Shown: positions 28,941 through 63,912 of the stretch, piece after piece
Numbering within the stretch: position 1 is the stretch's first letter
Layout: every line of letters begins with the position of its first letter
Assembly (NCBI RefSeq): GCF_021869535.1
Contig: NW_026262690.1
Location: 50,158,001-50,222,000 of the forward strand
Origin: Mytilus californianus
Lineage: Eukaryota
Reading direction: 5' to 3'
Length of the DNA: 64,000 nucleotides
The notes under the pieces: model-generated
What the model saw: the letters and a program-made list of their open reading frames with translations, nothing else
What the model was told of the DNA's origin: nothing
Database searches by the model: none
Position numbers and translations under genes: made by a program

Positions 28941-31813
28941 TCACGTTCGTATCATATTCGTCCTTTTCATTGCTTCTATCAATAAAGTCATACTCTCTAA
29001 TACTCCACTGCCTGTTCTGGCACACATACCATGTATGAACCATTGTCTGTCCTCTATCTGACATAATTCAAGACCTGATGCAAGATCTTTAGGAGTTAAA
29101 GTATCTAACAAAGAAAACAACTTGTGTTTAAACATTGCATATGGGCGCGCATTTAAAACATTCTTATTGTAGATTCAACGAAAAAATCCATAGTTTCATT
29201 TATCAACCAAATAACTGTTTGTTCTAGCTTAAATGATTGCAAGTTTTATAATTTTACAGAAACAAAAATTTGATTTTGTACTTTTTGTCCACAGAAGAAT
29301 GCGACAGAGTATTGAAATGAATTTGGATAGAAAAGATTTTTTAGATAACTCCTCCTGGTTTATTTGACAATAGAACCATGAAAATGGTAACTTTCTTTCA
29401 TAATTATTTAATTTTTTTTGTATTTGAAAGAATAGGGACTTACTAGGTAGATCCTGCTTATTAGCTATAACCCCAAGAGGAATACCTCGTGCTTCTTTGC
29501 AGTTCACTATGTAACGATGGAGGGCTTCTTTAGCTGAATGTAATCTTTTTATATCGCTGCTATCGACAACAAATAAAATGCCTGTAAAATTTTCCGTTTG
29601 AAAATTTATTTAATTTTGACTAATAATAATTACGAATAGACACAATTTTAACAACAAAATTAACAAATAAGGTATATCTCGACTTCTTTAATAATCACTG
29701 TTTTCAGATCTTTCATTAATATAGAATAAACATGTAGGTTTTTTCTTCAAAGGACAAGAAATGAGTTCCACCATTAATAATTAAAATATATGATGTCATA
29801 TAAGTGTGTAAATGTAGATGAAGAATGTTTCATACTAGAATAACATTTGAATATGCAAATATACTTAACAATAAATTGCACGCACCAGTGTATGATCGAA
29901 GATATAGTCGATATTATTGCAGGATAAATTCTTTAAATAAATGATGTGTTTGACTTAATTTCCATGTACTCCAAGCCATAAACTAGTAGGTTCACGAAGG
30001 ATTAAAATTGGCCCTACGATTTTAATGTTTTTGAATCGGGTCAAAATACTACAAATTTCACATAGAAATGTTTATGATATTATTTTTGATACAAAATAAC
30101 TTCTTTTTGGCACAGCACATTACAAATTACGAAGTATTGACCCCTATATTATGCATAATGTATGCTGTAACGTCAGTTTTGGTCCAATTTCACCAATATT
30201 TATCACAGTTTTAGCACAATTAAATTTGGCGATATTTGGGTAAACCTTGTCCTCTGCTACAATTAAAAAAAAATGGAACTCATTTCAAAAACCACTATCA
30301 ATTGTTATATGCTAGTAATAAGGTTCTAACTATTTGCATGTACAGAACATGGCCATAAGTATTCGTCACTTGTCATATAAAACTATGCTTTTTTTTTTAA
30401 ATAATGTGGGGTCATTTCTGGTAAGATTTTAATCAACTTGGTATCAATAGACGCAGAATTTTTACAGAATTATTCAGTCACAGAAACTTGAAAAAAAGAA
30501 AGGTGACGAATACTTTTGGCCATGCACATGTAGGTTGAAGTGTCTTAAAAAAAACGCGTAAAAAAGTAACATCAATTATAGTATGAAGGGTTCATTTTTG
30601 TTCTTCGGATTTCTTTGATTTTTTTAAATATTTCATGAAAAATTATTAACTTATGAAATAAGATTTCATTTTTATATGAGGAAAAATGAAACAGGTGGCG
30701 TTATCTTCTGAATTGTTTCACATTTTGTCATCCCGTGGGCTTACTATAGCTTATTATAGGGAATGGGTTTTGATCATTGTTGAAAACCGTACGGTGACTT
30801 GTAGTTGTTAACATTCTTGTTCTTTATTTTTGGTGGATAGTTGTCTCTTTTTCAATAATACCACATCTCATTTTTATATCAGTCACAAGACTTTGTCGGA
30901 TCATTGAAATTACTTCTCATAAAAAATCTTTTTCAACAATACAATATTTTAAACTCTCACAACAAGATAAAATTCACAGTTCACGAAACCCGATAAATAT
31001 GAGTGCAATAAATCACAGAGACTAAAAGTAGAAGAACGATTGTTCTAGTAAAAACATTATTATTTGTTTAATTTAATATATTTGGCATGTTTAGCAGAAA
31101 TCTGCATCAAACGGTGCATTGAAGTAGATTATTTTGTTTTTTAAATTTTGTATTATAACCACATGCCTCAGTGTATTCAAATGTATAAAATGTTAACTAT
31201 AGGATACTGCTGTTATATGTCAAACCTGACGCATTCAAGAAATAACGCTTCCATTCGTGCCTGATTTTATCCCCGCAACCAACATCCAAGATTGTGAAAT
31301 GTATCCCTCTGAATGTATTAACCGTCTCTATGTTAAACCCAATAGTAGGTAATGTCTCAGAAGTCTTATTTTGAAGCTTATATAATAGCGTAGTTTTCCC
31401 TAAAAATAATAAAAACATCATTGGTAAGATCAGATAATAATAATTAGAAATAGGTTATATAAATCCGATGGCTAAATATCGGAAGATTTTTTTTTGAATC
31501 TATATTATATTTAATGTAAGCTGATGCAAACTTGACAACAAGGTTTGTACTTCGAACAATTATTATGTGTTGTGGATACTTTTGCTTAATGAATGAAGGA
31601 CCATTATATCACTGTGCAAAAAAAATAGTTCTCTTATTTTACTTATTTCCAAATTATTTTTTTGTATCCTAGAGGCGCCAAATAAGTAACATCCAATATA
31701 CATTATTCATAATTACCTGTTGAGGTCAAACCTAGCATTACAATCGTCAATGGCATCGGACCACTCGTTAAATGTTGCCAGAATTTGCTCCATTTTGATA
31801 AGCATATTCCCAT
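28941..31813 (-). CDS. Divergent ARF-like GTPase A5, 190 aa (GLTSTGKT, LDVGCG)
   Basis: join(31717..31813,31226..31399,29444..29581,28941..29104); 573 nt, open frame, GT-AG introns. MGICLS start; NKQD retained. Confidence 0.92.
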
Positions 31814-32574
31814 ATTGTGAATATTTAATTCAAAATTATATCATGATTGTAAATCTACAGGATTGTATTCTGTCATCAATGCCGGATGTCAACTTCCAGA
31901 TTTTCCAATATGACGTGACAACTTCCTAACATTTATATGTTTAGAGAATAGTGTAATCGATCAAATACAACACGTTTTTGTATTTGTTATGGTACTTCCA
32001 TACATTTCGATTGTATTTTGTGTTATATACGGACATATTCCAGTTGTAATTAGTTTGCTTCTCAGCTGTTGCTTGGACGTGCTTAGAAAGAGGACAGAGT
32101 AACATTTAGTAGAATTAAGCTCACTTTCAGATATATTATAATTAATAAAACTTAAACAGTTAAACGATTCATGGCCTACCACACCAATTGTAAAAAACAG
32201 AGTGTAAAGTAAACTAACATTAGGATCAAATGTTCTTTCGAAGATGAAGTGTTGTTTAAAAGATAAACTGTTCTTTAGAAGATGAAATGGTCTCAAGTTT
32301 AGAGAACTCAAAAGAAACCATCGGATACTGTCCATTTCATATGCATGAACTTGAGATGTTGGGGAAAAGTAAAGCAACTCAACAACAATGATAACTAAAA
32401 TACATAAATAAGGCAACAACGAGTCTTCAGCAATGTATTGTCTTGGTTATGGGAATCTTTACTCAAGTCACAGTGACTCAAGTATTTGTTTTTTTTTCAG
32501 TTTTTTTCTGCTTTTCTTTCTTTAGTTTTGTTTTTGAGGAGCAAATGGATAGCTTATTGAGGTTTTGTTTAATG

Positions 32575-33090
32575 TATGTATATATATATATATATACAAG
32601 TCTAAATTGAAAACAACGTTCAAACCTATGATTGCGTTGGATAAAAACCGCAATTTTTATACTTGTGCATGCAAAACTTTCTTGGTAGAGGAGTCTAAAT
32701 ACAGCACAAACAACATTTTCCAAAAAAAAAAACAAAAAAGTGAAAAAGTATATTTTAACAAAACGCATTTGAGTAGCAAGTCGAACAACGGATGTTCTTA
32801 AACACTGCTGACTGCCATGGCGATTGCCAAATAAACGGATCACCAGATGTAATAAAATGGATCTTAATTATTAATTTAATACCAAACAGAAAACAATAAA
32901 CTTGCGGAAAAGATGGTATACCGCAAACATGAGGTACAAATATTGGTACACCATAACCGGATTTCGACAATTAATGTCTCTTCAGTGATGTTAGGAATCG
33001 AAACGGTATTTGGAAGGCCATATAATTTACCTCAATTTAGGATAGACTCTTGAATTTTGAAGAGTCGAAATAGGATGAACGGATCATATA
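32575..33090 (-). mobile_element. Hammerhead-bearing dispersed repeat, copy 2
   Basis: Reverse complement of 23220..23718; contains the HHR at 32948. Confidence 0.75.
32948..32991 (-). ncRNA. Minimal type I hammerhead ribozyme, one stem III mismatch
   Basis: Same as the 23317 motif but stem III reads ATCCGGTT. Confidence 0.75.
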
Positions 33091-33099
33091 TAACTACTC

Positions 33100-33390
33100 T
33101 AAATATGTTAACAATGTTAAATCTGCAAACTTGCGGAAGCAAATTTTTGTTCTTCCCTCCCCGGATTCGAACTCATGCTATTGGGATATCGAGACAACAC
33201 CGCCTGTACTGTGTCCAGCGCTATAGACCACACGGCCACCTAGACTGAACTTAAAATTCAGCTTTCGGTGGCCTAGTGTTACCTTTCCTCGTCAGTAGAA
33301 TTTAGAGTTGTAACACAGTACATGATATATTAGGCATGAAGATGGAATTGATTGCAGATTAGCTAAATTATATATCGTAAAGGATCGTAA
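33100..33390 (-). mobile_element. Second, partial copy of the tRNA-derived repeat
   Basis: A box TGGCCGTGTGG (33228-38) and B box GAGTTCGAATCC (33163-74) on the minus strand; homologous to 22870..23150. Confidence 0.7.
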
Positions 33391-33544
33391 GATGCAGTCA
33401 CAGAAATAAATATCTGGCATTATTTCAAAAAAAGATAGCATAAAAATAAATAGTACGGTAATAAATGACACTTACTTTTATACAGAACAAAATGAAACAA
33501 CGTTAACCAATGCAACCAAATTAGACGCTTCAAAAGGTATAATA

Positions 33545-33845
33545 ACAAAAATAACCGAACTCCAAGGAAAATTCCAAACGGAAAGTCCCTTATCAGATGG
33601 CAAAATCAAATCTCAAACACATCAAACGAATGGAAAACAACTGTCATATTCTTGACTTGGTACATGCATTTCCTTTTGAAGAAAATGGTGGATTAAAACT
33701 GGTTTTATAGCTAGCTAAACCTCTCACTTGTATGACAGTCGCATAGAATTCCATTACATTGACAGCAATGTGTGAGCAAAACAAACAGATATGATAGGTA
33801 AAAATGTCAAAAATTGGGGAACAGCAGTCAACATTGTGTTATAAT
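33545..33845 (+). repeat. Dispersed repeat (GAACTCC.AGGAAAATTC.AAACGGAAAGTCCCT family)
   Basis: Homologous to the minus-strand fragment at 36893..36970 that truncates A6. Confidence 0.7.
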
Positions 33846-35654: not shown

Positions 35655-35658
35655 TTAA

Positions 35659-36385: not shown

Positions 36386-36389
36386 TTAA

Positions 36390-36612: not shown

Positions 36613-36892
36613 AATAACCTGTAACCTGACAATAACCGGCTTCCGTAGTTTTAACACATATTTTCATTATCTGCTTGTATTTTTTAACATTTAGACGCAT
36701 TGCGCGCAAGTATAAGCGATATCCGATACCAATCTTCCCCTCCGATGATTGTGTTTCGTCTTGAACATTCAGACAACATTCTGTAATGCCGTCAGACATT
36801 ATAACATCCTAAGGGCCTTTTCGTTTTGAACATATCTGTCATTAAATTCAGGCTTTCATGTATTCCATCACCTCTCAGTGCACTGTCTCCTC

Positions 36893-36970
36893 AATTTTGA
36901 TTTTGCCATTTGATTAGGGACTTTCCGTTTTGCATTTTCCTCGGAATTCAGTATTTTTGTGATTTTACTT
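36893..36970 (-). repeat. Repeat end fused to A6 exon 2
   Basis: AAAGTAAAATCACAAAAATACTGAATTCCGAGGAAAATGCAAAACGGAAAGTCCCTAATC directly follows the DVGG codons. Confidence 0.75.
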
Positions 36971-37438
36971 TCCACCAACATCCCATATGGAAAATTTAAC
37001 ATCTTTAAATGCGTTGACAGTTTCAACATAAAACCCAATTGTAGGTATTGTAGTCTTAAGATCCACGTTTTTATACTTGTATAACAATCTAGTTTTTCCT
37101 TGGAAATAAAAATATGTTTAAAGACTAAGCAGAATAATTATAAACGTGGAAAGTAAATAAAAGTACAATACAACAATTTCAGTACAAATGTTATCAAAAT
37201 TCTGAACTTACAATTAGTGTGTATATACAAATATACACGTATACGTCTTATATTTAACACATTTATCTACATGTATATCCACATTTAAATGTTCAATACA
37301 AAGATGACTTGGTTCATCATACTAATTAAGAAAGTAACATGCTTCCTATAAATGAAAGATTCGAAACATGATTGCAACTTTTAAATTTCACCGCATTTCG
37401 AGTTTGAATCCGACTGTTTATCTGAGCTGATAAAACAT

Positions 37439-38700
37439 CAGGGGCGTAGGTAGGCCGATATGATGTGTACTCAATGCCGGAGGAGTAAGTGAAACGGCAG
37501 GGGTTCTTGGGACTTTAAATGACCTAACCGAAATCTTATTTTCTTGAGTAACAAGTAAACTTTTGGAAAAAAATAGAAAAAAAAAATATTAATTACAGAA
37601 AAAAACAATGAAGTACTGCTGGCTTAGGAATTTGGATGTTCTAATGTGTAGTGGGTTGAGCCTGGGAACAGTATGTTTGAGCTTGATTAAATTAAATTAA
37701 AAATATTATTCGTTGCTAGTTAGTTTAGGTTAAAAGGGGTGGTACTTGCACGAAAAAAACGTTAAATACAAAGAAGGAATAACAATTTCACGGTGAACGA
37801 GAAATAATTTCGTCCATGAACGTTGATAAAAAAAGTACTATAACGAACGCATATCGTAGGTTGGAAACCTTTAACTGGCAAGTATATAATCTGAGACTAC
37901 TATAACATATGTGTTATAGTAGTCTCAGATATAATATATACGTTTTAAGTCCCGAAATCTGAATCAAATCTATAAGAAAAATCATCAAATTATTTCCGAT
38001 TACTTTTTATTAACTTCCTAAACGATAGTCAGTCATTTAATTTTACCAAGCATAGAATACAAGCACTTTAAATCTCGAAGCATGGAAAATAAGCACTTTT
38101 AATCTCGAAGCACGTATAATATTAAGTTGGAAACACTTTGAACGAGGCACCCGTCTTGCACAACCGAACGTAAAAATAAAAAAAAAGTCAAAACTCGATG
38201 ATCGTCAATTTAAAAAAAAAAAAAAAAAAAAAACGGCAAGCACTATGCACGAAAATTATCCTTTACCAAACCCGTTAAACTTAAGTCAGACTGGACTGTT
38301 TAAAAAAATCTGTTATATATGACAACGTATGTAATTAAGACCATACATACCTCACATGAAAATCATGAGAATGAATCGTTGTCCATGGTCTCTTTAGAAC
38401 GTCATATTTTATTTCGTCAGTTATTTTGAAATCTTCAGAAAAGATGTCAGGACTGGGTAAGGAGGCATAGAATTGTTTTCTGACACCTCGAGGACCATTT
38501 TAATTGTTTGCATCAGCAACATAATCATGATGCTGGTTCCGTAAATTAAAAGTAATTTCAGGAACGGAATATAGCAACATAGTTTTTAATTTAATTTATT
38601 ACTTTAGTTTTATTCCTACTAGATTTACCATATTTTTATTTTTGTAAAATTTTCGATGTGTACGCAACTGCGTTTTTGCGTACGGGTTGCTACGCGCCTG
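37439..38700. mobile_element. Non-autonomous DNA transposon, CAGG termini, 5-bp TSD AACAT, in intron 1 of A6
   Basis: Left end CAGGGGCGTAG; right end read inward CAGGCGCGTAG; AACAT at 37434-38 and 38701-05. Confidence 0.7.
37889..37930. other. Perfect 19-bp stem, 4-nt loop hairpin
   Basis: ATCTGAGACTACTATAACA-TATG-TGTTATAGTAGTCTCAGAT, inside the 37439..38700 element. Confidence 0.9.
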
Positions 38701-39396
38701 AACATCAACTTACTTTTGCAGCGTTTGTCATTTATTCAGAAATCAGTGTAGCACTTATAGCTACTTAAAACCAAGACTTAAACATTACATATATACAGAC
38801 TTAAACATAACATATGTATATACAAAAAAAAAAACAATAACAAAATGTCAACTTTTTAAAAAGCACATAAAGTGTTACCGTTGGATTTCTACCGTTAAGA
38901 CACACCTTTACTATTCGATTTAGAATAAATACACTTACCTACCGCGTCTAAACCAAGCATCATAACCTTTAACGGTTTTTGACCATTTAACAAATAAAAC
39001 CAAAAACTATTAAACTTCGACACTAATATCCCCATGTTGTTAAGCAGATGACTTCTACATGTAAAACTTTCAACGTGTTTTTATGATGTCGATATTTCCT
39101 TTATAGGTTCGGTTAACCTAAGATCAGTGTATTTACAGTTCGTAAAAATCTATTTTAAATATAATATAGTAGGTAATAATCCTGAAAATATTGAAATTAG
39201 CAGACACAGCCGCATTGTATTCGTTTTTTTTTCTTTCTCTCTGTAAACTATCAATATGATTCGATGGTATAAATATGATCTCTTTCTGATAATTTTACTT
39301 ACAGTTTATTACCGGCATTAACAGTTTTACAATAATAATTCATTACAGGAAGATTTTTGTATTTATGATAGTTATTTATGATAGAAATTAAATATA

Positions 39397-46672: not shown

Positions 46673-49600
46673 CTATCTTGACGATTTTCGCTTTTTTATT
46701 GTATCCGACATCAATTTCATGCTTTCAAGTAATCCATCTCCTGTTTTTGCACTAACACCGTGTAAAAACCATTTTCTGTTTGTGAGCTGATGTAAACCCA
46801 GTTCACATGATATGTCAGATTTTTTTAGGGCATCTGGAAAAGGAAACATTTCTTAGTTTGCTTTGATACAACCGATTTTAGATCGTAATGTTGAAAATTA
46901 ATATCATCGTCATTCTGAAGCTATTTTGGTTTCATTTCAACATTTTTTGACATTCGTAAATTCTTTAAAAATTCTAAAAATCATTTTTCATGTAAAAAAT
47001 GTTTGTGCGTAACCCGTTTCCATAGAGACTATGACAAAAATTCTTCCCTATTTTAATCAAAATCAATTGGTTCCTCTTTGCAATCGGGTAGTTAAATTGA
47101 AGACGTCAATTTGTTATGGTCGTATCTTACTTCTGTTCGGCGTAGTCTTCTATATCTTGTATCTTAATACTTTTGCTTTGCGTCTTCTCACTTCAAAAAT
47201 ATTTTGTTAATTTTTCGTAAAGCTCATTAATCAGGATGGGAAAAAAAATGATAAGGACCTGATTTTTGTCCCATATTTTAACCATGTCCGAATGAACGCA
47301 CATACAATATTTTATAAAAAGAGCTCCAAAACATAAGTATCAAGGAAGTTTTTAATCATATTAGATATGAGAATTTCGGTGGACCAGTAATATATTTTTT
47401 ATATTTTTTTAAAAATTCGTCCATTTGGCTAAACAAACATATCAACACGTTTGAATGGCTAAGCCAACCGTTAAGTTTGTTAATACTACATTAATTAAGG
47501 ATGTACACCTCAGAGGAGCCAAAAATTTCTAGAATTAAACTTTTTTTCTTAACCCGATTTTTGGGTTTATATGACTGTAAAAAAATAGTTGGTAAAGAAA
47601 AAATCATATGGTGGTGCACTTCTTTTTTTGCTACAGCCATTTGAAAGTACCCAATTTTCATGATTTTCCCATTTTTCATCAATTTTTAGCCATTTTTGGG
47701 CTATTATCATGAAAGAAATCACAGTTTCACAATTAAACTTTTTTTCATACTTTCACTAAAGATGAAGTGAACCAATCTGAATAAACTTAACTAAAAAAAC
47801 TATAGGTAGGTGTTAATATAAGAAAGTTTTATAAAATTTTGTTGCTTTTTCGTGTCAAATTTACCATGTTGTCAATTTTGTAAATTTGGGATTTTTCTCT
47901 TTTTTTAGAACAAAAAGCATATTATTTCAACTTCTTTGTTATTAATGATTGAAAAAATTCATATCTAAGAAATTTGAAAAGAAAAAATTGATATGGGATG
48001 TATATGTATCTGGTAAAGTAATTTCTTGTACCCCTCACCCATTTTCTCAACATTTTGGCTAATGAGACTGACTTGATTGGTTATAAAATTTGAAAATTTT
48101 ATTACTCAAAAACTACTTATTGAAAATACACAATTTTTTCACAGAGTTAAGTTTGATTATAATATTTTTAAAATTCATTGATATTTTCCACTTGTAAGAC
48201 ATGTTTTGGAAATAATTCCAGAACAAGATTTTAACGAGACTGAAACGTCAGAAGAAAACATCCTTAAAATGGTTTTTTGCTTTTTTGTTTTTAGTGGACA
48301 ACATTACCTTTATAGCTGCTTAAACAAGTAGATATACCGTAAGAGATATATGTAATTAAATTCAAACATAATTCGATGGATTTGGCTATTTTTTGGGTCC
48401 TTTTTGGTCATATATCTCTTCAACTGTTTCGTTTCTTATATATACCCTTGGCTTTCAAATATTCGGCTTTGTGTGTTCCTGGGGAAAGTAAATCCAGTAA
48501 AGCGCTTCGGATGTATGAAATTTATTAAGTGTTGTTCTATTTTTTTACAGCACTGGGTCGATGGCACCGCTGGTGGACTATCAGTCATCGAGGGTATCAT
48601 CAGCTCATTAGTCAGTCCTTTGGTGACATGATTTATGACAAACCTTTAAAAAAATTATCCGTTTATAAAATTATAAATCATAACGAATCTAAAGTTTCAA
48701 CTCCCTCAGGCAAAGTTGACCTTAAATGTATTTGGCTATTTCTTTTATGTCCTTTTTGGTCATATAGCTCTTCTTCAGTTGTTTCTGTTACATCCTTGGT
48801 TTTCAAATATTCGGCTTTGAGTGTTCCTGATGTAGGTAAATACAGAAAAGCACTCCGGACGCATAAAATTTATAAAGTGTTGTTTTCATTTTTTTAAACC
48901 AATCTAATTTGTAAAGTGGGCATAATTACATTTAACATACAAAATGTTGAAACATATGAAGTTTTTCCATACATGGGTGCAAATTAGGCTCTTATCCTAC
49001 CATGTCAATTTTTAAATAATTCATGAAAATATCAGATGCTCTACTTAATAAAACTGACATACTTTGAACATCCTGTTTATTAGCTAGGATTCCTATTGGA
49101 ATATTTGCCGCTGTCTCACAGTTCACTATATACTGATGTAGGGCTTCCTTCGCCTCCTGTAGTCTCTCTTTATCACTGCTGTCAACGACAAATAAAATAC
49201 CTGTAAAAATTAACAAACTAGATCGATTAAATTCTAATTAGTTTAAATGCAAAAAAGAATTTGTTCGTTTACTTCTGAGCAGATAGCACTAGTAATCATT
49301 ACAAGAGAATCGCTGCAGCTTTGAACAATCGCAGATCAAGGCATTGCGGAGACTACAAACCATTTAGAATAGTATTAGAAAGTAGAATTTACTTAGTCAT
49401 CTATATTCATTGTCGTATACAGTATACGTTTTGTTCTATTGATGATTTAATGAACTAATAAATTAATCGTACCAAAATAAAATTAATTACTGAAAAAAAA
49501 ATGTTCATCAAAATACGTAAGCTGGAAAACAATCCAGCATAAGGCACTCACCCGCTGCATCTCTGTAATACTGCTTCCATGTTACTTTTACTTTTTCCCC

Positions 49601-49911
49601 ACCACCAACATCGAGCAAATTGAAGTGAACGCCCTTCAGTGGATTTATTGTGTGAATGTTAAATCCGATAGTTGGTATCGTCAAACTATTTCTATTTTGA
49701 ATCTTGTACGACAATGTCGTTTTTCCTGCAATATCAATAAATCTTTATGTTCAAATATCAACTCATATATGGCAGTTTATGGATTGTTAAAATGTTCAGT
49801 TCAGTTCAGTTAAGACTGGTCGAATTATATACTGTTTAATTTATTACCTGCTTCATCTAAACCTAGCAGAAGAATAGTCAATGGTTTCTTGTTTGATGAA
49901 CAAATTCCCAT
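46673..49911 (-). CDS. Divergent ARF-like GTPase A7, 178 aa, short N-terminus (LDVGGG)
   Basis: join(49848..49911,49552..49725,49063..49200,46673..46833); 537 nt, open frame. MGICSSNKKPLTILLLGLDEAGKT; NKQD; VSAK. Confidence 0.9.
47499..48263. mobile_element. TTAA-flanked MITE K2, copy 2, in intron 3 of A7
   Basis: TTAA|GGATGTACAC ... ACATCC|TTAA; inverted homolog of 35659..36385. Confidence 0.85.
48380..48900 (+). mobile_element. Retrozyme-like unit: ~348-350-nt monomer between two degenerate hammerheads
   Basis: Direct repeats at 48381 and 48731. HHR-like motifs at 48473..48514 (palindrome AAGCGCTT intact, core CTGGGGA broken) and 48821..48862 (core CTGATGT, palindrome broken). Confidence 0.65.
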
Positions 49912-53470: not shown

Positions 53471-54865
53471 CGTGTTTGGATTGATGTCTTCGTAATATTT
53501 TCAGTTATAAACAATTTTACAGGCACCTTCCGGTAAAGGACTTGGTAATCCTTCGTCCTAGACATTCTGTCAAGATTAAGGGATGGGGCTTGACATGTAC
53601 TGATGGTTTTTGAATTTGGTGCATGATGTCTTAGGGTTAGACATTTATCACTCAGATATATTAACCACTGTCTGAATATGATTCATTCATGCAATTCAAC
53701 CAGAGTAAAATGACGGCTGTCACTAATGGAGAAAGAACTACTGACCCTTAGGAACCCATGAGTTCAACCCTTCTTCCGTATTTTGGTGGGGTTCATGCTG
53801 ATAATTCTTTAATATTTATGTGTAGTGTTTTGTGGACTATTGTTTGTCTTTTCGTTCTTCTTCTTTTTGGTCATGGCGTTGTCTGTTTTTATTCGATTTG
53901 TGATTTTATTTTGCAATCTCGTTCTCTTCTCTCACTTTTCAGAGAATAAAAAAATATGCATACCATAAAGTTGTTGAATCGTTTTCTGGTGGTTTCATAG
54001 ATATGAGACTTAACGCGGAAGTATAATTTCACCTGTAGGGTTTTAATAAAAAAAAATGATATTTAACACCCAGCTTTTCATGGTTATCACGCTTTTTCAG
54101 TTTAATCACCAAGTATTGTAATTATTATTTTTTTTCTGATTAGATGGGGAGTAAACATCAAATAAGTCGTTATCTTAACGTACTTTTCAATGAATTATGA
54201 ACCGCAAACCAGTGAATATTGTATCAGTTCGAACTTTTTTTGGGATTTCAGGAGTTCTTCAGAGATTCAGCAAGTGGGGTATTCTTTTCACCCCAAAACA
54301 TCTCTTTCTTTAATTGGGAGGGGAAGATTGTGGGGGTGTCATGGGGTTTTCGCCGATATCATTCTACGTTCCTCATGAAGGTGAATCCAGAATATATATA
54401 TATATGTGTATGTGTGTGTGTGTGTGTGACAATAATATAAGTTTGGTTTTAATTTACTGATAATAACACATCAACATTTATAAAAATAAAAATAATATTC
54501 AAAGATCTAAGTATAATGTTGAAATTGTAACCTTTTATAAGTTTATTTAAAGAATCGATAAGATTACCCGGATCGTATCTAAATGTCCGGGCTCGGTAAA
54601 CAACATCTCCGTAAATATTAGGATGTGCTATCCCGTTTGAAACATGTTTTCTACAGGTACCTTCGTCCTTTCCTTTCGATTTTCGAGTATTTTGTTGTAT
54701 TCTTTCAGCAGCATTTTTTAGTATTTATTTCCTCATTCCTACTAATTGGTTTTTAATGAACATGCTTTGTGGTATGTTCTGAGTGGTTATCGTGTTTGGT
54801 ATTATTTGGTTTCTTATAACGTGGTAAATCAATATGGTCACCTTTTATGTCAAACACACAGCAGG

Positions 54866-56842
54866 TTATTTCCTGATGGCTTCTGCCATAGCTCTCATGC
54901 TGTCATTTAGTCCATTTCCTGTTGTGCCACTTGCACCGTTGATAAACCAACGTCTGTCTCTCACTTCATGCAAATTCAAAACGTTTGCAATTTCTGACGG
55001 ACTAATGGCATCTGCAAAATTCAAATTAAATTTGGACATGCTACTTTTTTCAATATTCAAATATATTTTATTCTTGAGTAATCGTTTAATGCATTTTTTT
55101 TGTAAAAACACAGATTAATCATATTCAAAATGCAAATTCGTCCTTTTTAAAAAGAAATTTAATTCGTTTATTAAATTTCAAGAACGTTTGAGACGTTAAT
55201 GCATGTATGTAAAATGTTTTACAAAGACTCTACACATAAAAAACAATGAAATTTTTGTAAACTCGTAAAAAATAAAAATAAGTAATAAAATTATATGCAA
55301 GTCATGTGTTATCGAAATGGTATTTAATATAAGACAAACTACTTCATAAATATAAGATACGAACTAGGAAGGTCCTGTTTATTGGCTATAACAACCAGTG
55401 GTACTTCTTTCAATATGTCAAAGTTAAGTATACGATGTAATATATCTTTCGCTTCATTCAGTCTGTCTCCATCATTGCTATCCACAACGTACATGATGCC
55501 TGCAAAATTACAGAATAGTAAAAACGACATGGAAGTAATTTGTTTATTGATATGTTCAACTTCTCAAAACGTAAGCACAACAAAGATTAAAGAGACTTTC
55601 AGAAATCGACCCTTTCAGTCAAGGTAAATCTGTTTATCCTCAACAGTTTGGTACATGTAACCTTTCTAGTAATATATGATTATTTAACCGTTCATATTAT
55701 TTAAGCGCAAAAAAGTTAAATTATCCAGAGTTTATCATAAAAGTGTGGCACAACATTCATACAAGACTTGTAGTTACTCTGTATACACTATAAAATGTAG
55801 CGTAAGAGTCACTCAATTGAGACAGAATATAAAAACTTTAGGCATACCTGCTGTGTTATTAAAGTAATGTACCCACAAAGGAATCATGTCTTCTAGAAAA
55901 GGAATGTCCCATACCGTGAAATTGATCCCTTCAACTGGAGTAATGGTTTCGATATTAAATCCAATCGTTGGTATTGTCTGAACGTTTATGTTGTATTTCA
56001 TCTTATATAAGATTGTCGTTTTTCCTACAAGCAATTACAAAAATGTTAATGTATTGTCTCATGTAATATAAAATACCTTCCGGTAGGAGGAATGTTGATG
56101 GGATCGACATTTTTCTGTGAACCAAAAGAATGTCTTTAAGGCAGTGGTCACTGGATGAAAAAAATGTTGAAGAGGCCCAACTCCTCTAATGATTGATTTA
56201 AATTTATAAAACAAGAAGATGTGGTATGGCGCCTAATGAAGCAACTGTCAACTCGATACCAGATGACGTAGACGTAAGCAACTACTATAATCTTCAACAA
56301 TTAACAAAACCTATACCGTATGGTAAGCTATACACGTCCAAAATTGACAAAATTTAAAACAAGAAAACCATCGGCTTGATTTACATATTAAACATTAAAC
56401 GAAAAACAAATATGAGAGACAGCAAGTAACAACCACTGAATTATAATGACTTGGGCAAGGGACCTACATAATGTGGCGGGTTTAAACAAGTTTACTAGCG
56501 ATCATTCCTCTTCTAACCAAAACTTTGCCACTTGACGTTAAACAAACCAACAATCAATCAATCTAACCTAGAATTACAAATTATAAAAACAAATTAAAAA
56601 AAAAGAAGATTAAGACCTTTCGGATCGATTTAAGCATATTTTAAACATCCCCGAGTTCTGTTCCAACGCTTAGAATACGACTGTCGTCGAATTGTACACA
56701 TGATACATGTAATACCTTTCAATATACTAATTCATAAAACAAGAGAACCGGCATTTGACCTCCCTCCACCGTCTAATCCAAGCATTACTATTTTGTATGT
56801 AGCTGGTTCTCCTAACAAAGATTTAGATATCAATGATCCCAT
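54866..56842 (-). CDS. Divergent ARF-like A8 (WDIPFL); exon-1 donor non-canonical, possible pseudogene
   Basis: Exon 1 ~56764..56842 (MGSLISKS..GLDGG), exon 2 55848..56024, exon 3 55365..55499, exon 4 54866..55011; no internal stops. The expected exon-1 donor reads G|GGAGGT instead of G|GT. Confidence 0.72.
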
Positions 56843-57267
56843 GTTATATTAATGTTAATGAATCTTTCTGACACACAAAACAAACAACAAAAAACGTCCA
56901 ACATGGCATATCTCACGGGGGTATTTTAATTTTAAGAATAGAAATAGTAAATAAAATAAATATGTTTATAAATATATAGTTACAACGTTCACATATTTAA
57001 ATTTAAATGGCTTGTCAAAACGGAGGAGTATTTTCACAAAGTATTGATTTCTTTGTTTCGCTTGAACTACTGTTGACGTAACAGGAATTGGAAGTAGTTC
57101 AAAAAACACAATTGACGGAATACTTCCATTTTGACAACTGTAAGTAACCTCCCTGTCCCCTTCGAAAATTAGTCTTATGATGTGTAAATGATTGAATAAT
57201 GGCAAGACATATTAGTTTTGTTTTACTACTATGGAACGCCAAAAACTGTCTTGTTCTGGCCATTTTC

Positions 57268-57754
57268 ATTATATGATGTGCATTTACCTTTATATGATGT
57301 GCACTTGTCATTATATGATGTGCAAACACCTTTATATGATGTGCAAATATCCTTATATTATGTGCAAGTATCCTTACATGATGTCAAAACATCCTTATAT
57401 GATGTGCTAATATACTTATATGATGTGCATATATACTTATATGATGTGCAAATATACTTATATTATGGTCAAATGTACTTATATGATGTGCAAATGTACT
57501 TATATGATGTGCAAACATTCTTATATGATGTGCAAATATTCTTATATGATGTGCAAATATCCTTATATGATGTCATATATAATTACATGATGTGAAAATG
57601 TACTTATATGATGTGCAAAGATCCTAATATGATGTGCAATTATACTTATATGATGTGCAAATATACTTATATGATTTTCAAATATTCTTATATAATGTGC
57701 AAATGTACTTATATTATGGACAATCAGCTTTATATGATGTGGTTGTAACCTTAC
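57268..57754 (+). repeat. 21-bp minisatellite (TATATGATGTGCAAATATACT-like)
   Basis: More than 20 degenerate units; a further unit continues after the transposon at 61314. Confidence 0.92.
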
Positions 57755-60700
57755 CACTGTGTCTAAACTACCCCGGCAAAAAAATGTTTGGACTCGAATA
57801 TCTAATATCCGGCACGGTGACGGAACATCAATAGACAGAGAAAAGGTAGTTTTCTGTTTATTTATTTGTTATTTTTATGATACCGAAGAATATATATATA
57901 TACATATATAACTATTTTCTATTGTGAGATGTAATATTTTCTACAACCATTCTATTAACGGAGAAATAAGTAAAAAAACACGTCAAAATGACGAATTGAG
58001 TGAATCTTGCCTCGAATTTGTTTAATATCTCGTTAAATTGTTCACATTGTACTGAAAGAAAGGTACGGAAAGAAAAATATTGGCATAACAAGCCACTTTG
58101 AGCACCTCAATACTTGTATTTCTGTGTATGGAACGAAAGAAATGGATCATGTCAAAATGGAAGGAGCCGATTTTGTCAATGTGTACAACCCGGTTTTGTC
58201 CTATATTTCACAAGGCAGAACCCGGTTTTGTCAAAGAAAAAAATGCATAATCGCATAACATAATTGAACTTTTGCGTTTTAAAGGAGTCTGGTGGCTCGT
58301 TGGAAAACGATTTCTTTCAGAGGACAACTTATTATTTATTTGAATCTGTAAACACTTGAATTCCTTCTTTATTGGAACAAAAATAATTATAATTTTGCTT
58401 TGCATTTAAACATGATAACCCTACTCACATACATCCAATTTCGCGGGTGTCCCTGTTTTTTTTTATTTCTTATAAAATTCCAAGTTGGTATACGATTTAG
58501 TTATATAAAATTAGTGACGAATCCAGGCAGCGTATAGGTCGCACGTCCCCACCCCACCTTTGATGGCCCCAAAAAAATTAAATAATGTTTTTTACGATTT
58601 TTTTTTAGCTTAAAATCGCCCAAAAAATACTTTAACTGCGAAATAGAAATGAAGGTTATAACGCAAATTGAGATTTAAGTCCTCTGTACCTTTTTTTCTA
58701 TGAAATATGTAAATTTAAGTGATCAAACTTGAAATTAAAGTTTACGGTCTTAAAAATTGAAACACGCACATTTGATATGTGATTTTCTTGCACAACAGGA
58801 TGGTTATCTTTATAAGTAATCCAATCTACCAAGAGGTGTTATCTTGAATGTCCCTCTGGCATCTTTCGCCCCTCTTTCCTATAATCGTTTAAAATAAATC
58901 TTCTTCAGGCTAAGTGTCTATTATAAGACATGATAAGAAGACAAATGTATAGGTGTAATACCACCAAATGATAGTACATCCGGTTGCCTACGAAAATAGG
59001 TCGAAAAAAATATTCCCTTGAATTTGACAGTTGTAGGTAATTAATTCTACATTTCATTGCAGTAAAACATTTCTGGGTCATAAACATATATCTTGGGTAT
59101 TTCAAAGCACCATTATTTTTTATTTTGGGTTTCCATAGAATATTTTAGAAACTTGAGGTTACATGGTTACTAATTAAAAGCTTGTACACAGATAAAAAAG
59201 AGGTGAAAATTTGATTGGTTAACTTCCAGTGATGGTTATTTTCTTATATGCAATGAAATGTTATGTGAAATTTTTTCTATAGTACTGAACAGGATAAAAC
59301 TTTACTCATGCCAAGTATTTCTTTATTTGAAACAAAGACAAATTCTGCACATTTTTTTGAAAAGTGCAAATTTGACAAAGACTAATAGGAGAAAATCAAT
59401 GGTGGTAGTACACCTATATGCATGCAGAATCGCCATAGAAAATGAATGTTTATGGGGAGAAAAGGATAATACTAAGTGTAAATTTGTGCAATTGTCTCAG
59501 GCCATCAAGAAAATGCAATAATGATTATTTAATTCATAGTTCTATAAACAAACAGTTCTGTTATCTCTTCATTGTGTTATGATTATCGTACATTGGCGTT
59601 GGTCAATATATCATTAACAATATATAGGGATGGATTTAGGTTTTTTCAAAGTGGGCGTATTTCAAACAACTTACATACCGCCGAGCGTAGCGAGGCGAAC
59701 AATTTTTTGGACGATTTTAAGCTAAAAAAAAATCGTAAAAAACATGATTTAATTTTTTTGGGGCCATCAAAGTTGGGGTTTGGGGCGTGCGACCTATACG
59801 CTGCTTGGATGTATGTGAGTAGGGTTATCATGTTTATTCTAAAAATTCACATTGATATTTTAAAATTGTCGAAATGCGAGACCAAAGGATGCAAATTCGT
59901 GGCGGCTTGAACTATTTGTATGGAGCTTCATATGTCAGAAGTTAGAAGGCCTGACTACCTCGCACACAGATCTTTTATCTTACGATGTTTCTATCTGTCA
60001 TATGTCCATTGCCCTGGCTTTGACCTCATTTTAGTTCAGCGATTTCCTAACAAAATGAATAGCTGTGAATATCACACTGATAATGGTTGATATACATGAT
60101 CAAGGTTAACATTTCGTGTTCAATATAAAAAAGTAGATATGGTATGATTGCCAATGAGACAACTCTCCACACCAGACCAAATGACACAGAAATTAACAGC
60201 TACATGTCACCGTACGGCCTTCAACAATGAGCAAAGCCCATACTGCATAGTCAGCTATAAAAGGCCCCGAAATCACAAATGTAAAACAATTCAAACGAGA
60301 AAACTAACAGCCTAATTAATGTACAAAAAATGAACGAAAAACAAATATGTAACACAAATCCGTATCTCTAATACCATAAGTAAAAGGTCAACTATATTTG
60401 CTCATATGGCCACATGACTATTTATGAGACCTTGAACTTATTTTCTTGATTAATTGGTAAATGTTAAGTTTTTATTTTTTTTGTTGGTTTTAATGATTGT
60501 AATGTGTTCATGTCCGTCTGGCAGGTTTCATTAGACCTTGACTTTTTTATGGTTCCATGAATAATGTTAAGTTTATGTGATACTTTTATTAAATTATTTA
60601 TCTTACAGATCTTCAAAATAGGTTCAATTACGATCATTCAAGCAGTCGCTACATGTCAGTGCGTACGCTCTTGTATAAATAATATGTAGTATTTATTTTT

Positions 60701-61313
60701 GTTGAAAAAACGCATGTGAAGTTGTTTTAGAATAACATATATATTGAAATTTTTTCGATGGACAATGTTTAGATCCGTGTTAACGTGCTTTCCATACATT
60801 TGTGGTTTCAAAACAAAACAAAACCGGGTCATATACATAGACAAAACCGGGTGATTTTGTAGTAAACAACATTGACAAAACCGGCTCCTTCCCTTTTGAC
60901 ATGACCCATTTCTTTCGTTCCATACACAGAAATACAAGTATTGAGGTGATCAAAGTGGCTAGTTTTGCAATCTCCATGTCAATATCTTTCTTACCGTACC
61001 TTTCTTTCCGTACAATGTGAACAATTTAACGAGATATTAAACAAATTCGAGGCAAGGTTCACTCAATTCGTCATTTTGACGTGCATTTTTACATATTTCT
61101 CCGTTAATCTAGAATGGTTGTAGAAAATATTAAATCTCACAATAGAAAATAGTTTTATATATTTATATATATATATATTCTTCGATATCATAAAAATAAC
61201 AAATAAATAAACAGAAAACTACCTTTTCTCTGTCTATTGATGTTCCGTCACCGTGCAGGATATTAGATACCATCGAGTCCAAACATTTTTGCCGGGGTAG
61301 TTTAGACACAGTG
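57755..61313. mobile_element. Non-autonomous DNA transposon with Transib/RAG-like ends (CAC termini, 5-bp TSD CTTAC, ~480-bp TIRs)
   Basis: The arms 57755..58231 and 60818..61313 are inverted repeats; the first 28 nt are identical (CACTGTGTCTAAACTACCCCGGCAAAAA). CTTAC directly flanks both ends (57750-54 and 61314-18). No transposase ORF recognised. Confidence 0.85.
60127..60357 (+). repeat. Sister dispersed family, nested inside the Transib-like element
   Basis: GGTATGATTGCCAATGAGACAACTCTCCAC head. Confidence 0.8.
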
Positions 61314-61607
61314 CTTACATGATGTGGTTGGGTTTACTTCGTTATATGATGTCGAAACGTCATTATGTGCTTTCATCGTCGTTATGGTCAATGAACATGA
61401 TTACGATTAGAACGATTACTGTCTATGTCATAACTGATTCCGATCTGCTTCTGTGGAATTACTATAAACCTGGCGCAAATCTGTAGCTATCGTTTGGAAA
61501 ATGGTTGAGATTTAAAAAGAGATAAACCTTGGCTTGTTGGTACCTCGTTTTAAGATAAAAAAGATCAAATCTGATATTGTTGGAAAATTGTCAAAATATG
61601 AATTGCA

Positions 61608-61942
61608 AAAGAGGGACGAAAGATACCAGAGGGACAGTCAAACTCATAGATCGAAAACAAACTGACAACGCCATGGCCAAAAATAAAAAGAAAAACAGAC
61701 AAATAATAGCACAGATGACACAACATAGAAAACTAAAGACGTAGCAACACGAACCCCACCAAAAACTGGGGGTGATCTCAGGTGCTCCGGAAGGGTAAGC
61801 AGATCCTGCTCCACATGTGGCACCCGTCGTGTTGCTTATGTTATTACAAATCCGGTAAATAGTCTAATTCGGTATGTCACATTCGTGAAAAGGGAAGGGT
61901 ATTGTAGTTACGACATAAGGAACATATCCGATATCATCTGCA
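61608..61942 (+). repeat. Dispersed repeat (GAAAGATACCAGAGGGACAGTCAAACTC...CTCCGGAAGGGTAAGCAG family)
   Basis: Related minus-strand fragments at about 8130-8280, 9690-9865, 53705-53915 and 58848-58880. Confidence 0.65.
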
Positions 61943-62756
61943 AAGTTCAGTTTTAATCGATGGGTCTACAATAATAAACATACGGGGTCTACAATAATGA
62001 TCATACGGTTATAGTTATTAAATTTAAGAAATAATTCTTTTATGCCATGCTCTATGCTCATTTTAACAAGGGTTGGCATTCATTGGACTGGGGAAATATC
62101 ATTTAAGTGACTGTTTTCGAAACTTTCACTTCCTTTCTTTTTAGTCATTCGGTTGAATATTGTCCTGATTTTTATATTAAATGATACATTACAAAACATT
62201 TTTGAAAAAGACTATTTTTTACTCCTTTTTCAGCATTTCTACCAGGTGCAAAGCTGAATATATGTCTACTAATATTAAATAATTTATCAAAATCCTCTAT
62301 AGATAGCCTAAGGTGTCACTACGGTTCATTCATTTGAATTATCACATGTAAGACTATCTATACTGAAGCGCTGTTATTTTATTACGTTTTGAGACTCAAA
62401 TGATACAAAAACATTATACCAGTATGCTTCATGAATCATGCTTGTTCTTCAGTATTGTTCTTAGAATGTTGGCCCCGTGCAACTGTATAAAATCCATGCT
62501 TTTTCAAGTGCTTGTAGGAATTTTTGTCATCAAATAATTTACCATATCCGTTCAGTTGTTATTTTTATTTACTTATTAATTTACTTATCTGTTTTTAATC
62601 AAATTATATGTTTCCTTCTTTATTCCAGTTGTGTCTTTTCATTATATATAGTGTCGTGACTCTTTTAATTTCGGAGGAACAAATACATATTGACAGTTAT
62701 TCTATCTTATATTTCATTATTTCATCGTCCTTTATTTCAGTAATGTTCTAAAACGC

Positions 62757-63912
62757 ATGGGTGGAAGGTCCTCGAAAGTTGATGAATTATTTTCACACTT
62801 TCCACAGTTAGATAAAACTCATATAATAGTGATTGGATTACACAATGCGGGTAAGAATAATTTAAGGAAATAGTATCATATTGGACAGATTAATTTAAAG
62901 CAATAATATCATATTGAACAGATTAATTTAAAGCAATAGTATCATATTGGACAGATTAATTTTAAGCAATAGTATCATATTGGACAAATTAATTTAAAGC
63001 AATAGTATCATATTGGACAGATTAATTTAAAGCAATAGTATCATATTGGACAGATTAATTTAAAGCAATAGTATCATATTGGACAGATTAATTTAAAGCA
63101 ATAGTATCTTAATAGATAGACATGGTTTCAACTTCTTTACGCATGACACATGTTACCGGAATAGTCCTCATCGGATATGGTCTGTAAACCAGACCTAAAA
63201 TCTAAAAAGGTGTAATGATTAATCGTTAAATAGATTCTATATTTTTCGACAGGTAAAACATCCATTATGCGAGGCATGGGTTTAGATTCCGGCTTGAAGA
63301 AGATTTCCCAGGTAGGAATGCCAATTCTGACAGCAAAGATTGGTAAAAATGTCCACATCACAGCATGGGATGTTGGTGGACCTGGCAAATTACGGAGTAT
63401 GTGGGAGCATTATTTCAGTGTATCTAAAGGTAAATTTATAATTTTTCAAACCTTTTGCCTTAATTAGCAAATATAATTACAGTAGTTTCATAATCAATCT
63501 ATGGAAGACCTACACAAAATGTGCGATGGCATCAAGATTGAAAGAAAATAAATATTATCATTTCTTTATAAATACCATTTAAAATTAAAAAAAAAGGCAG
63601 GTTTGTTGCAGTTATTCGATATCTGTGTTTATTTGAAAAAAAGAAAGAACTCCATTAGACTTATGAATTTGAATATCCCTTTGGTAACTTTCGCCTCTCA
63701 TTTTCCTTTGCTTATTTCATTTGAAATGACTAAATCTGCAATCATGTATTAATTTTGAATCATATAAATACATTCAGGTATAGTGTTTGTAGTTGATAGT
63801 ACTAACAAGGAAACACTAGCAGAAGCTTCTGTGGAACTTAATACCATTTTAAATAAAAAGATATTGGCTGGTGTTCCTTTAATGGTAATGGCAAACAAGC
63901 AAGATATGCTCG
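62757..63912 (+). CDS. Divergent ARF-like A9, 3'-partial (exon 4 outside window), opposite orientation
   Basis: join(62757..62850,63253..63429,63778..63912); GT-AG introns, phase 1. MGGRSS..GLHNAGKT, switch I KISQVGMP, WDVGGP, NKQD. Confidence 0.9.
62859..63108 (+). repeat. 33-bp minisatellite, ~7.6 copies, in intron 1 of A9
   Basis: TTGGACAGATTAATTTAAAGCAATAGTATCATA starts at 62881, 62914, 62947, 62980, 63013, 63046 and 63079. Confidence 0.95.

What the first reader, a model, noticed from the sequence alone, without database searches (positions are those of the whole stretch)
28941..63429. The catalytic Gln is replaced by Gly, Gly, Leu or Pro in four paralogs while NKQD is kept
Seen: the G3 segment reads DVGCG (A5), DVGGG (A7), DIPFL (A8) and DVGGP (A9) versus DVGGQ/DIGGQ in A1-A4. 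All four keep GKT and NKQD, and their frames and most splice sites are intact. Established: Q71 is required for ArfGAP-stimulated hydrolysis; Q71L locks ARF1 in the GTP state; ARL13B naturally has Gly here. Inference: repeated evolution of GAP-insensitive, GTP-locked or pseudo-GTPase ARFs. A5 and A7 share other features (MGIC start, 174/138-nt exons), so their Q-to-G change may be a single event.
Basis: partly seen in the sequence, partly recalled or inferred. Interest (0 to 1): 0.75.

Follow-up and report, generated by a model that had tools for sequence, protein, structure and literature searches.

The report
Mussel ARF paralogs lacking catalytic glutamine
A tandem array of ARF-type small GTPase genes in the mussel Mytilus californianus contains several conserved copies that lost the glutamine needed for GTP hydrolysis, through three separate evolutionary events; this makes them new, lineage-specific examples of the already known "atypical" or pseudo-GTPase kind.

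Summary
The window is Mytilus californianus. It holds a tandem array of four-exon ARF genes. A1-A4 read D[VI]GGQ, and so does A10 just outside the window. A5 reads DVGCG, A7 DVGGG, A8 DIPFL and A9 DVGGP. All four keep GKT and NKQD.

Orthologs in M. edulis, M. coruscus, M. trossulus and M. galloprovincialis keep the same substitutions in A5, A7 and A9. dN/dS between species is 0.15-0.33, and every bootstrap interval lies below 1. A spliced A7 mRNA contig exists. These are constrained genes, not neutral pseudogenes.

There were three independent losses, not four:
- One Q-to-G change in the ancestor of A5, A6 and A7. A6 is now a pseudogene.
- Q-to-P in A9.
- In A8, the two glycines went first (M. 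edulis still reads DISFQ). Q-to-L followed only in the californianus/coruscus lineage.

In this reference haplotype A8 has also lost its canonical intron-1 donor (GT to GG). The site is polymorphic, and RefSeq models a 144-aa product without a P-loop.

"GTP-locked" remains an inference. It is plausible for A7. A5, A8 and A9 carry further G-motif lesions and look more like non-switching pseudo-GTPases. Glutamine-less ARF-family members are already known (ARL10, ARL13, ARL15, ARL16), so this is a new member of a known kind.

The parts
28941..31813 (-). A5 gene, 190 aa. Exons 31717-31813, 31226-31399, 29444-29581, 28941-29104. G3 = DVGCG at 31272-31286. P-loop GLTSTGKT, NKQD kept, N-terminus MGIC.
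   Evidence: Model. The same exon map on M. edulis DNA gives the annotated protein P0156 exactly. dN/dS against M. edulis is 0.15.
36795..39035 (-). A6 pseudogene. Exon 1 is about 38934-39035 and exon 2 about 36968-37099. A 2-nt deletion inside the G3 codons gives DVGGK-stop. The middle of the gene is deleted, and a remnant of the last exon lies at 36795-36890.
   Evidence: M. coruscus A6 reads DVGGG but has a frameshift in exon 3. M. edulis A6 lacks the G3 stretch.
46673..49911 (-). A7 gene, 178 aa. Exons 49848-49911, 49552-49725, 49063-49200, 46673-46833. G3 = DVGGG at 49598-49612. Short N-terminus MGICSSNKKP; [14 protein letters not shown] and SAK all kept.
   Evidence: The model is identical to XP_052105354.1 (P0278). 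D[VI]GGG is found in five Mytilus species. dN/dS is 0.20. The spliced mRNA contig L011 matches the exon boundaries.
54866..56842 (-). A8 gene. Exons 55848-56024, 55365-55499 and 54866-55011. Exon 1 starts at 56842 and ends at 56764 (canonical position) or at 56749 (in-frame cryptic donor). G3 = DIPFL at 55894-55908; NKQD kept.
   Evidence: RefSeq models only 144 aa, starting inside exon 2 (P0293). dN/dS is 0.21-0.33.
56762..56763 (-). Canonical intron-1 donor of A8. It reads GG here, and GT in M. edulis and M. coruscus. It is polymorphic within the species.
   Evidence: Alignments. In read laying, runs X7 and X8 carry A at 56762 on the + strand, which means GT. Run X1 agrees with the window.
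62757..64000 (+). A9 gene, first three exons: 62757-62850, 63253-63429, 63778-63912. Exon 4 lies 1522-1718 bases beyond the window end. G3 = DVGGP at 63369-63383. Switch-I Thr replaced (KKISQVGM), P-loop GLHNAGKT, NKQD kept, G5 reads CGT.
   Evidence: DVGGP is found in M. edulis and M. coruscus. dN/dS is 0.07-0.32. It is single-copy in the genome.
5341..27256 (-). Canonical comparators A1 (5341-6912), A2 (12266-14553), A3 (17741-19624) and A4 (25688-27256). All read D[VI]GGQ, with 94/177/135-nt exons.
   Evidence: A1 equals RefSeq P0301. Paralog dN/dS is 0.07-0.10.

Best explanation
The region is a Mytilus-specific extension of a mollusc-wide tandem array of ARF-like genes. Within the array, duplicates lost the switch-II catalytic glutamine three separate times and were then kept by purifying selection.

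- A5/A6/A7 lineage: one Q-to-G change in the common ancestor. A5 later also changed the DxxG glycine to Cys. A6 decayed.
- A9: Q-to-P, together with loss of the switch-I threonine and an altered G5 motif.
- A8: the two G3 glycines were replaced first (S/P-F). The Gln became Leu only in the californianus/coruscus lineage.

Inferred mechanism. These proteins still fold as ARF G-domains and are N-myristoylated on Gly2. A5 and A7 probably also carry palmitate on Cys4. They cannot carry out ArfGAP-assisted GTP hydrolysis. A7 keeps G1, G2, G4 and G5 intact, so it most likely binds GTP and stays GTP-bound, as ARL13B, the Rnd proteins or an ARF1 Q71L mutant do. A5, A8 and A9 have extra lesions in motifs that sense the gamma-phosphate, so they are more likely non-switching pseudo-GTPases that work through binding alone. 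The A8 allele in this reference has additionally lost its canonical exon-1 donor. It may be a segregating null or P-loop-altered allele.

Shown: the sequence states, their conservation, selective constraint, the phylogeny, and one spliced transcript.
Inferred: nucleotide binding, lack of hydrolysis, and lipidation.
For: - Motif states and exon models.
- Pfam Arf matches on every exon-2 and exon-3 peptide.
- Species identity and identical RefSeq models.
- Orthologs with the same substitutions in up to five Mytilus species.
- dN/dS of 0.15 (A5), 0.20 (A7), 0.21-0.33 (A8) and 0.07-0.32 (A9), with bootstrap intervals below 1. Intron divergence is 0.22-0.40.
- Between the paralogs A5 and A7, dN is 0.35 against a saturated dS of about 2.
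- Tree: A5+A7 clade 99/90, A5+A6+A7 83/79, with A8 and A9 as separate clades.
- A spliced 1108-nt transcript contig of the A7 ortholog has exon junctions as modelled.
- The closest solved relatives are ARF1 and ARF6, and the Gly aligns with ARF1 Q71.
- The AlphaFold model of A7 is an ARF fold (pLDDT 80.8; TM 0.82-0.87 to ARF structures).
- Literature: ARL13B lacks the catalytic Gln, has very low intrinsic hydrolysis and may be mostly GTP-bound (PMC4868535). ARL10, ARL13A/B, ARL15 and ARL16 lack the switch-II Gln, and pseudo-GTPase classes are defined (PMC12722892).
Against: - No biochemical property was measured.
- No RNA evidence was obtained in M. californianus itself. One RNA run, with 6% of its reads sampled, gave no reads on A8 exons. 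Expression of A5, A8 and A9 rests only on gene models.
- The AlphaFold model of A7 resembles GDP-form ARFs more than GTP-form ones. This gives no support to a constitutively 'on' conformation, though the bias may come from the alignment.
- Some GTPases without the Gln are still switched off by GAPs that supply catalytic residues (discussed in PMC10505919).
- dS between the paralogs is saturated, so the constraint estimates rest on the species comparisons.
Confidence: 0.7

Rival explanations
1. The variant copies are untranslated pseudogenes drifting neutrally. The altered G3 motifs are simply decay.
For: A6 in the same array is a clear pseudogene, and a stop-riddled ARF fragment lies just downstream. 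The A8 reference allele has lost its canonical intron-1 donor, and RefSeq gives it only a truncated 144-aa product. No RNA reads fell on A8 in the sampled run.
Against: A5, A7 and A9 have intact frames and GT-AG sites in 3-5 species. dN/dS of 0.15-0.33 is significantly below 1 for all four, including A8. A spliced A7 mRNA exists. The true pseudogene A6 shows what neutral decay looks like here: a different frameshift or deletion in each species.
Confidence: 0.05
2. The proteins still cycle. A dedicated GAP supplies the missing catalytic residue in trans, as Rap1GAP's asparagine thumb or the TBC dual finger do. On this reading they are regulated switches, not GTP-locked.
For: Such mechanisms exist in other small-GTPase families (PMC10505919). 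The ARL13B authors could not exclude a GAP that supplies catalytic residues (PMC4868535). A7 keeps all nucleotide-binding motifs, and its switch II is strongly conserved among species.
Against: No such GAP is known for the ARF family (my own knowledge). A5, A8 and A9 also lack residues that sense the gamma-phosphate (the DxxG glycine or the switch-I threonine), and a trans-acting GAP would not repair that.
Confidence: 0.15
3. They are nucleotide-free or GDP-bound scaffolds (class I type pseudo-GTPases) that no longer bind GTP at all.
For: A5 has the DxxG Gly changed to Cys and the P-loop Asp to Thr. A8 lacks both G3 glycines, has an altered G5 (SGT), and has a doubtful P-loop join in this allele. 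A9 lacks the switch-I Thr and has an altered G5 (CGT) and P-loop Asp. The A7 model takes the GDP-like ARF conformation.
Against: GKT and NKQD, the main phosphate- and guanine-binding motifs, are kept and conserved across species in all four. That would be unexpected if nucleotide binding had been abandoned.
Confidence: 0.1

Closest known systems
ARL13B (and ARL13A)
   Same: It is an ARF-family G-domain with Gly in place of the switch-II catalytic Gln, as in A7 (DVGGG). It has very low intrinsic hydrolysis and may be mostly GTP-bound (PMC4868535; PMC6140319). Its N-terminus is palmitoylated on Cys (own knowledge), which parallels the Gly2/Cys4 start of A5 and A7.
   Different: The mussel proteins are not orthologs. 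Their nearest solved relatives are ARF1 and ARF6, and they branch inside a mollusc ARF-like array. They end at 178-200 aa, without ARL13's coiled-coil and proline-rich tail. They occur only in Mytilus among the proteins found here.
ARF1 Q71L / ARF6 Q67L laboratory mutants
   Same: The same residue is replaced in an otherwise ARF-like G-domain. These mutants are used as GTPase-deficient, 'GTP-locked' forms (own knowledge; PDB entries such as 8rsq and 2a5g appear among the matches).
   Different: The mussel substitutions are natural, fixed and selectively maintained. They are accompanied by other changes: W66 to L in A5 and A7, a truncated N-terminal helix in A7, and loss of the DxxG Gly in A5 and A8.
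Class II pseudo-GTPases (Rnd1-3, RhoH) and atypical ARLs (ARL10, ARL15, ARL16)
   Same: They are small GTPases that lack catalytic residues, bind but do not hydrolyse GTP, and are regulated by expression or modification rather than by cycling (PMC12722892).
   Different: They belong to different families or subfamilies and are ancient, widely conserved genes. The mussel copies are young, lineage-specific tandem duplicates, with three independent losses in one array.
Mollusc ~187-190-aa ARF-like tandem genes (for example Crassostrea virginica LOC111119543-45, Saccostrea echinata LOC133190169-72)
   Same: They share about 50-56% identity, the same length, and a tandem arrangement. They are the parental type of A1-A4, A10 and A8.
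   Different: They keep GGQ. A few Saccostrea copies read D[IV]AGQ, but none of those fetched lacks the Gln.

Membership tests
ARF family (Pfam PF00025) | Significant match to the Arf profile | tested here: met
   The exon-2 and exon-3 peptides of A5, A7, A8 and A9 all score 33-54 bits against a cut-off of 22.3.
ARF family (Pfam PF00025) | N-terminal Met-Gly (myristoylation site) followed by an amphipathic helix | tested here: inconclusive
   All copies start MG with Ser at position 6. In A7 the helix is cut to about 10 residues (exon 1 is 64 nt instead of 94 nt). In A8 it is shortened by a deletion. Lipidation itself was not tested.
ARF family (Pfam PF00025) | G1 P-loop GxxxxGK[ST] | tested here: inconclusive
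   Present in A5, A7 and A9. In A8 the canonical donor that joins GLDGG-G to KT is GG in this allele. Cryptic in-frame donors would add 5 residues to the loop or remove 2.
ARF family (Pfam PF00025) | G2 switch-I threonine (ARF1 T48, in TIPTIGF) | tested here: inconclusive
   Kept in A5, A7 and A8. Replaced in A9 (KKISQVGM).
ARF family (Pfam PF00025) | G3 DxxGQ with the catalytic Gln | tested here: not met
   The motif reads DVGCG, DVGGG, DIPFL and DVGGP. The Gly of A7 aligns with Q71 of ARF1.
ARF family (Pfam PF00025) | G4 NKxD and G5 (C/S)A(T/K) | tested here: inconclusive
   NKQD is present in all four; M. edulis A9 reads NKKD. G5 reads CAR in A5 and SAK in A7, but SGT in A8 and CGT in A9.
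ARL13 subfamily | Orthology to ARL13, plus a C-terminal coiled-coil and proline-rich extension | tested here: not met
   The best solved matches are ARF1 and ARF6, not ARL13. The tree places the copies within the mollusc ARF-like array. The proteins are 178-200 aa and have no extension.
Class II pseudo-GTPase (binds GTP, does not hydrolyse) | Catalytic residue absent | tested here: met
Class II pseudo-GTPase (binds GTP, does not hydrolyse) | GTP binding retained and hydrolysis absent | not testable with these tools
   This needs purified protein and nucleotide assays.

The most novel reading that the evidence does not exclude
One young tandem array has produced non-hydrolysing ARF derivatives three separate times, each then held under purifying selection. 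A7 has its amphipathic helix cut away and a Gly2/Cys4 dual-acylation start. It would be a constitutively membrane-bound, permanently 'on' ARF. Such a protein would act as a lineage-specific organiser or decoy of ARF effectors or GAPs rather than as a switch. This would be a natural series showing how pseudo-GTPases are born from a canonical switch.
Probability: 0.25. Interest if true: 0.6.

Novelty: new member of a known kind. Interest (0 to 1): 0.45.

Why it matters
ARF-family members without the catalytic glutamine are known, but they are ancient and each arose once. Here several stages sit side by side in one locus:
- canonical parents (A1-A4, A10);
- a clean Gln-to-Gly copy (A7);
- copies with further motif erosion (A5, A9);
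- a copy caught between species with and without the Gln (A8: DISFQ versus DIPFL), with a segregating splice-donor variant;
- a dead copy (A6).

This gives a compact natural system for asking which G-domain features stay under selection once hydrolysis is lost. It also supplies ready-made natural variants for biochemical comparison. For genome annotation, it warns that names such as "ARF1_2", "ARF6" or "ADP-ribosylation factor-like" on these mussel genes should not be read as canonical ARF function.

Tried and rejected
- Spliced proteins of the window have no single reference, so full-length A8 and A9 of this genome could not be given to the protein searches. I used exon peptides and database protein ids instead. 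No id was obtained for A9.
- The first homolog search used too strict an E-value and returned only six hits.
- The look-up of encoding contigs found nothing for P0007, which is a mis-spliced M. edulis A5 model.
- The single read-laying run gave no RNA evidence. X7 and X8 behave like genomic DNA, since their contigs run across intron and intergenic sequence. The one true RNA run (X21) was sampled at 6% and had reads only on repeats. The call did reveal the donor polymorphism.
- YN00 and ML pairwise estimators failed or timed out on the saturated paralog pairs. NG86 with bootstrap was used on ortholog pairs.
- The idea that A9 is an ortholog of a known glutamine-less ARL was rejected. Its nearest relatives are ARF1-type proteins and a GGQ-bearing gastropod protein.
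- The idea that A7's truncated N-terminus forces a GTP-like fold gained no support from the AlphaFold model, which is GDP-like.
The window contains no N runs.


Full report
**What is in the window.** The window is AT-rich (about 32% GC) and has no N runs. tblastn with an exon model of one copy finds nine ARF-like genes. Eight lie on the minus strand and one on the plus strand. The flanks fetched from the same contig add the last exon of A9, a stop-riddled fragment, and a tenth intact copy, A10.

Explicit models show the same structure in every copy: four coding exons and three phase-1 GT-AG introns. Exon lengths are 94/177/135 nt plus a variable last exon in the canonical copies. A5 has 97/174/138/164 nt and A7 has 64/174/138/161 nt.

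That protein is XP_052105354.1, which equals my A7 model. My A1 model also equals a RefSeq protein.

**The observation.** The G3 pentapeptide is DVGGQ or DIGGQ in A1-A4 and A10. It is DVGCG in A5, DVGGG in A7, DIPFL in A8 and DVGGP in A9. GKT and NKQD are present in all. All exon-2 and exon-3 peptides match Pfam Arf well above the cut-off. The Gly of A7 aligns with Q71 of ARF1 in the PDB search.

- A5 and A7 have Leu for the Trp that precedes the Asp.
- A5 has Cys for the DxxG glycine and Thr for the P-loop Asp.
- A8 has lost both glycines, and its G5 reads SGT.
- A9 has lost the switch-I threonine (KKISQVGM), has His for the P-loop Asp, and its G5 reads CGT.
- A7 has only about ten residues before strand 1.

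A6 is a pseudogene. A 2-nt deletion inside the G3 codons gives DVGGK-stop, and the middle of the gene is deleted.

**Orthologs.** An exhaustive profile-free search with the A7 exon-2 peptide found a 178-aa M. edulis protein at 91% identity, and an A5-like protein. Cluster look-ups and word searches then gave:
- A7 orthologs in M. edulis, M. galloprovincialis, M. trossulus, M. coruscus and M. californianus, all reading D[VI]GGG;
- A5 orthologs in M. edulis, M. trossulus and M. galloprovincialis, all reading DVGCG.

Beyond Mytilus the best hits drop to 38-45% identity.

Genomic loci from M. edulis (L008, L010) and M. coruscus (L009) contain the syntenic series A9-A8-A7-A6-A5. All orthologs of A5, A7, A8 and A9 that could be modelled are intact and have canonical splice sites. 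A9 reads DVGGP in all three species.

A8 reads DIPFL in M. californianus and M. coruscus. It reads DISFQ in M. edulis, M. galloprovincialis and M. trossulus. So the glycines were lost first, and the Gln was lost later, in one lineage only.

A6 of M. coruscus reads DVGGG but has a frameshift in exon 3. In M. edulis the G3 stretch is deleted.

**Selection.** dS between the paralogs is saturated, at more than 1.5. dN is far lower, for example 0.35 between A5 and A7.

Between species, Nei-Gojobori estimates with a codon bootstrap are as follows:

| Copy | Comparison | dN/dS | 95% interval |
|---|---|---|---|
| A5 | californianus-edulis | 0.15 | 0.07-0.29 |
| A7 | californianus-edulis | 0.20 | 0.09-0.41 |
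| A8 | californianus-edulis | 0.33 | 0.18-0.61 |
| A8 | californianus-coruscus | 0.21 | not quoted |
| A9 | californianus-edulis | 0.32 | 0.20-0.54 |
| A9 | californianus-coruscus | 0.07 | not quoted |

Alignable introns differ by K = 0.22-0.40. The canonical paralogs give 0.07-0.10. All of the A5-A7 divergence, and all divergence between species, came after the loss of Gln. The proteins have therefore stayed under purifying selection without it.

**Number of events.** A maximum-likelihood tree of 39 proteins gives an A5+A7 clade with 99/90 support and an A5+A6+A7 clade with 83/79. A8 forms a separate clade with a long stem. A9 has a very long stem (2.1 changes per site) and sits next to a GGQ-bearing gastropod protein. 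Taken with the DISFQ state of A8, this means three independent losses of the Gln: Q-to-G once, Q-to-P once and Q-to-L once.

**Expression.** A 1108-nt Logan contig (SRR26849178) carries an uninterrupted 178-aa ORF. It aligns at about 99% identity to the four exons of M. edulis A7, with junctions exactly as modelled. It is a spliced mRNA. For A5, A8 and A9 I have only gene models. The single reads experiment gave no RNA support for A8: one RNA run, 6% sampled, no exon reads.

**The A8 allele of this window.** Where M. edulis and M. coruscus have G|GTAGGT at the ARF-conserved exon-1 end, the window has G|GGAGGT. Two cryptic GT sites would keep the frame. Both would change the P-loop, one by adding five residues and the other by removing two. 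RefSeq annotates only a 144-aa product that starts inside exon 2 and lacks the P-loop.

In the laid contigs, one DNA run (X1) agrees with the window. X1 may come from the same individual as the assembly. Two other runs with the same species label (X7, X8) carry the GT allele on a haplotype that differs by about 2.6%. The donor loss is therefore a real, segregating variant. A8 in this species may be drifting towards loss, although its between-species dN/dS still shows past constraint.

**Mechanism.** Established knowledge says the switch-II Gln positions the attacking water, and that Q-to-L mutants are used as GTP-locked forms (PMC10505919; PMC6140319). ARL13B naturally lacks the Gln. It has very low intrinsic hydrolysis and may be mostly GTP-bound (PMC4868535). 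ARL10, ARL13A/B, ARL15 and ARL16 also lack it, and pseudo-GTPase classes are recognised (PMC12722892).

By inference, A7 has every other G motif intact and is most likely a GTP-binding, non-hydrolysing ARF derivative. A5, A8 and A9 also lack gamma-phosphate sensors (the DxxG Gly or the switch-I Thr). They are more likely to be uncoupled from the nucleotide state altogether.

The MGIC start of A5 and A7 fits myristoylation on Gly2 plus palmitoylation on Cys4 (inference). Combined with the truncated helix of A7, this suggests constitutive membrane anchoring. The AlphaFold model of A7 is a confident ARF fold, with pLDDT 80.8 and lower confidence in the switch regions. It resembles GDP-form structures more than GTP-form ones. 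Structure prediction therefore gives no support for a locked-on conformation.

**Comparison and novelty.** The nearest solved relatives are ARF1 and ARF6, not any known glutamine-less ARL. The parental type is a family of ARF-like genes of about 188 aa, found in tandem in oysters, scallops and other molluscs. The kind of protein, an ARF-family member without the catalytic Gln, is known. These are new, lineage-specific members, annotated in databases only as "ARF1_2", "ARF6", "ADP-ribosylation factor-like" or "uncharacterized protein". I found no paper on them.

Interest is moderate. The locus offers a natural graded series, but nothing in it contradicts current understanding.

Noticed in passing
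window 36795-39035: A6 is a dead member of the Q-to-G clade. It is broken differently in each species: a 2-nt deletion in G3 plus an internal deletion here, a frameshift in exon 3 in M. coruscus, and a deleted G3 stretch in M. edulis. The M. coruscus annotation fuses it to A7 as one 291-aa protein (P0151).
   Followed up: partly
L004 2219-2392 (about 2.2 kb beyond the window end, minus strand): A stop-riddled fragment of an ARF exon 2 lies between A9 and A10. It is another decayed copy in the array.
   Followed up: no
L004 9213 to L005 1688 (minus strand): A10 is an intact canonical copy (DIGGQ, 195 aa), so the array extends beyond the window. A further ARF-like exon 2 lies 9.7 Mb away on the same contig (G000:C110:59947049-59947219).
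   Followed up: partly
proteins P0152, P0145, P0369, P0311, P0357: Other natural G3 variants turned up among the hits: a Lytechinus pictus protein with DIGYS, an unnamed ENA protein with DIGGG, one with DINGA, and Saccostrea copies with D[IV]AGQ. Sporadic loss or change of this motif in lineage-specific ARF duplicates may be commoner than annotation suggests.
   Followed up: no
proteins P0291 and P0276/P0281: RefSeq predicts an M. trossulus A8 isoform with an alternative first exon that replaces the P-loop. It also predicts 130-aa A7 isoforms in M. edulis and M. galloprovincialis that read into intron 3. These are possible P-loop-less or truncated products.
   Followed up: no
window 54536-54669 and 57216-58000: These stretches have very high contig depth in all the runs laid (up to about 10^5), so they are high-copy repeats. 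The second borders the 3.56-kb element at 57755-61313 noted by another reader. That element separates A8 from A9 here, and the A8-A9 gap is far shorter in M. edulis and M. coruscus.
   Followed up: no
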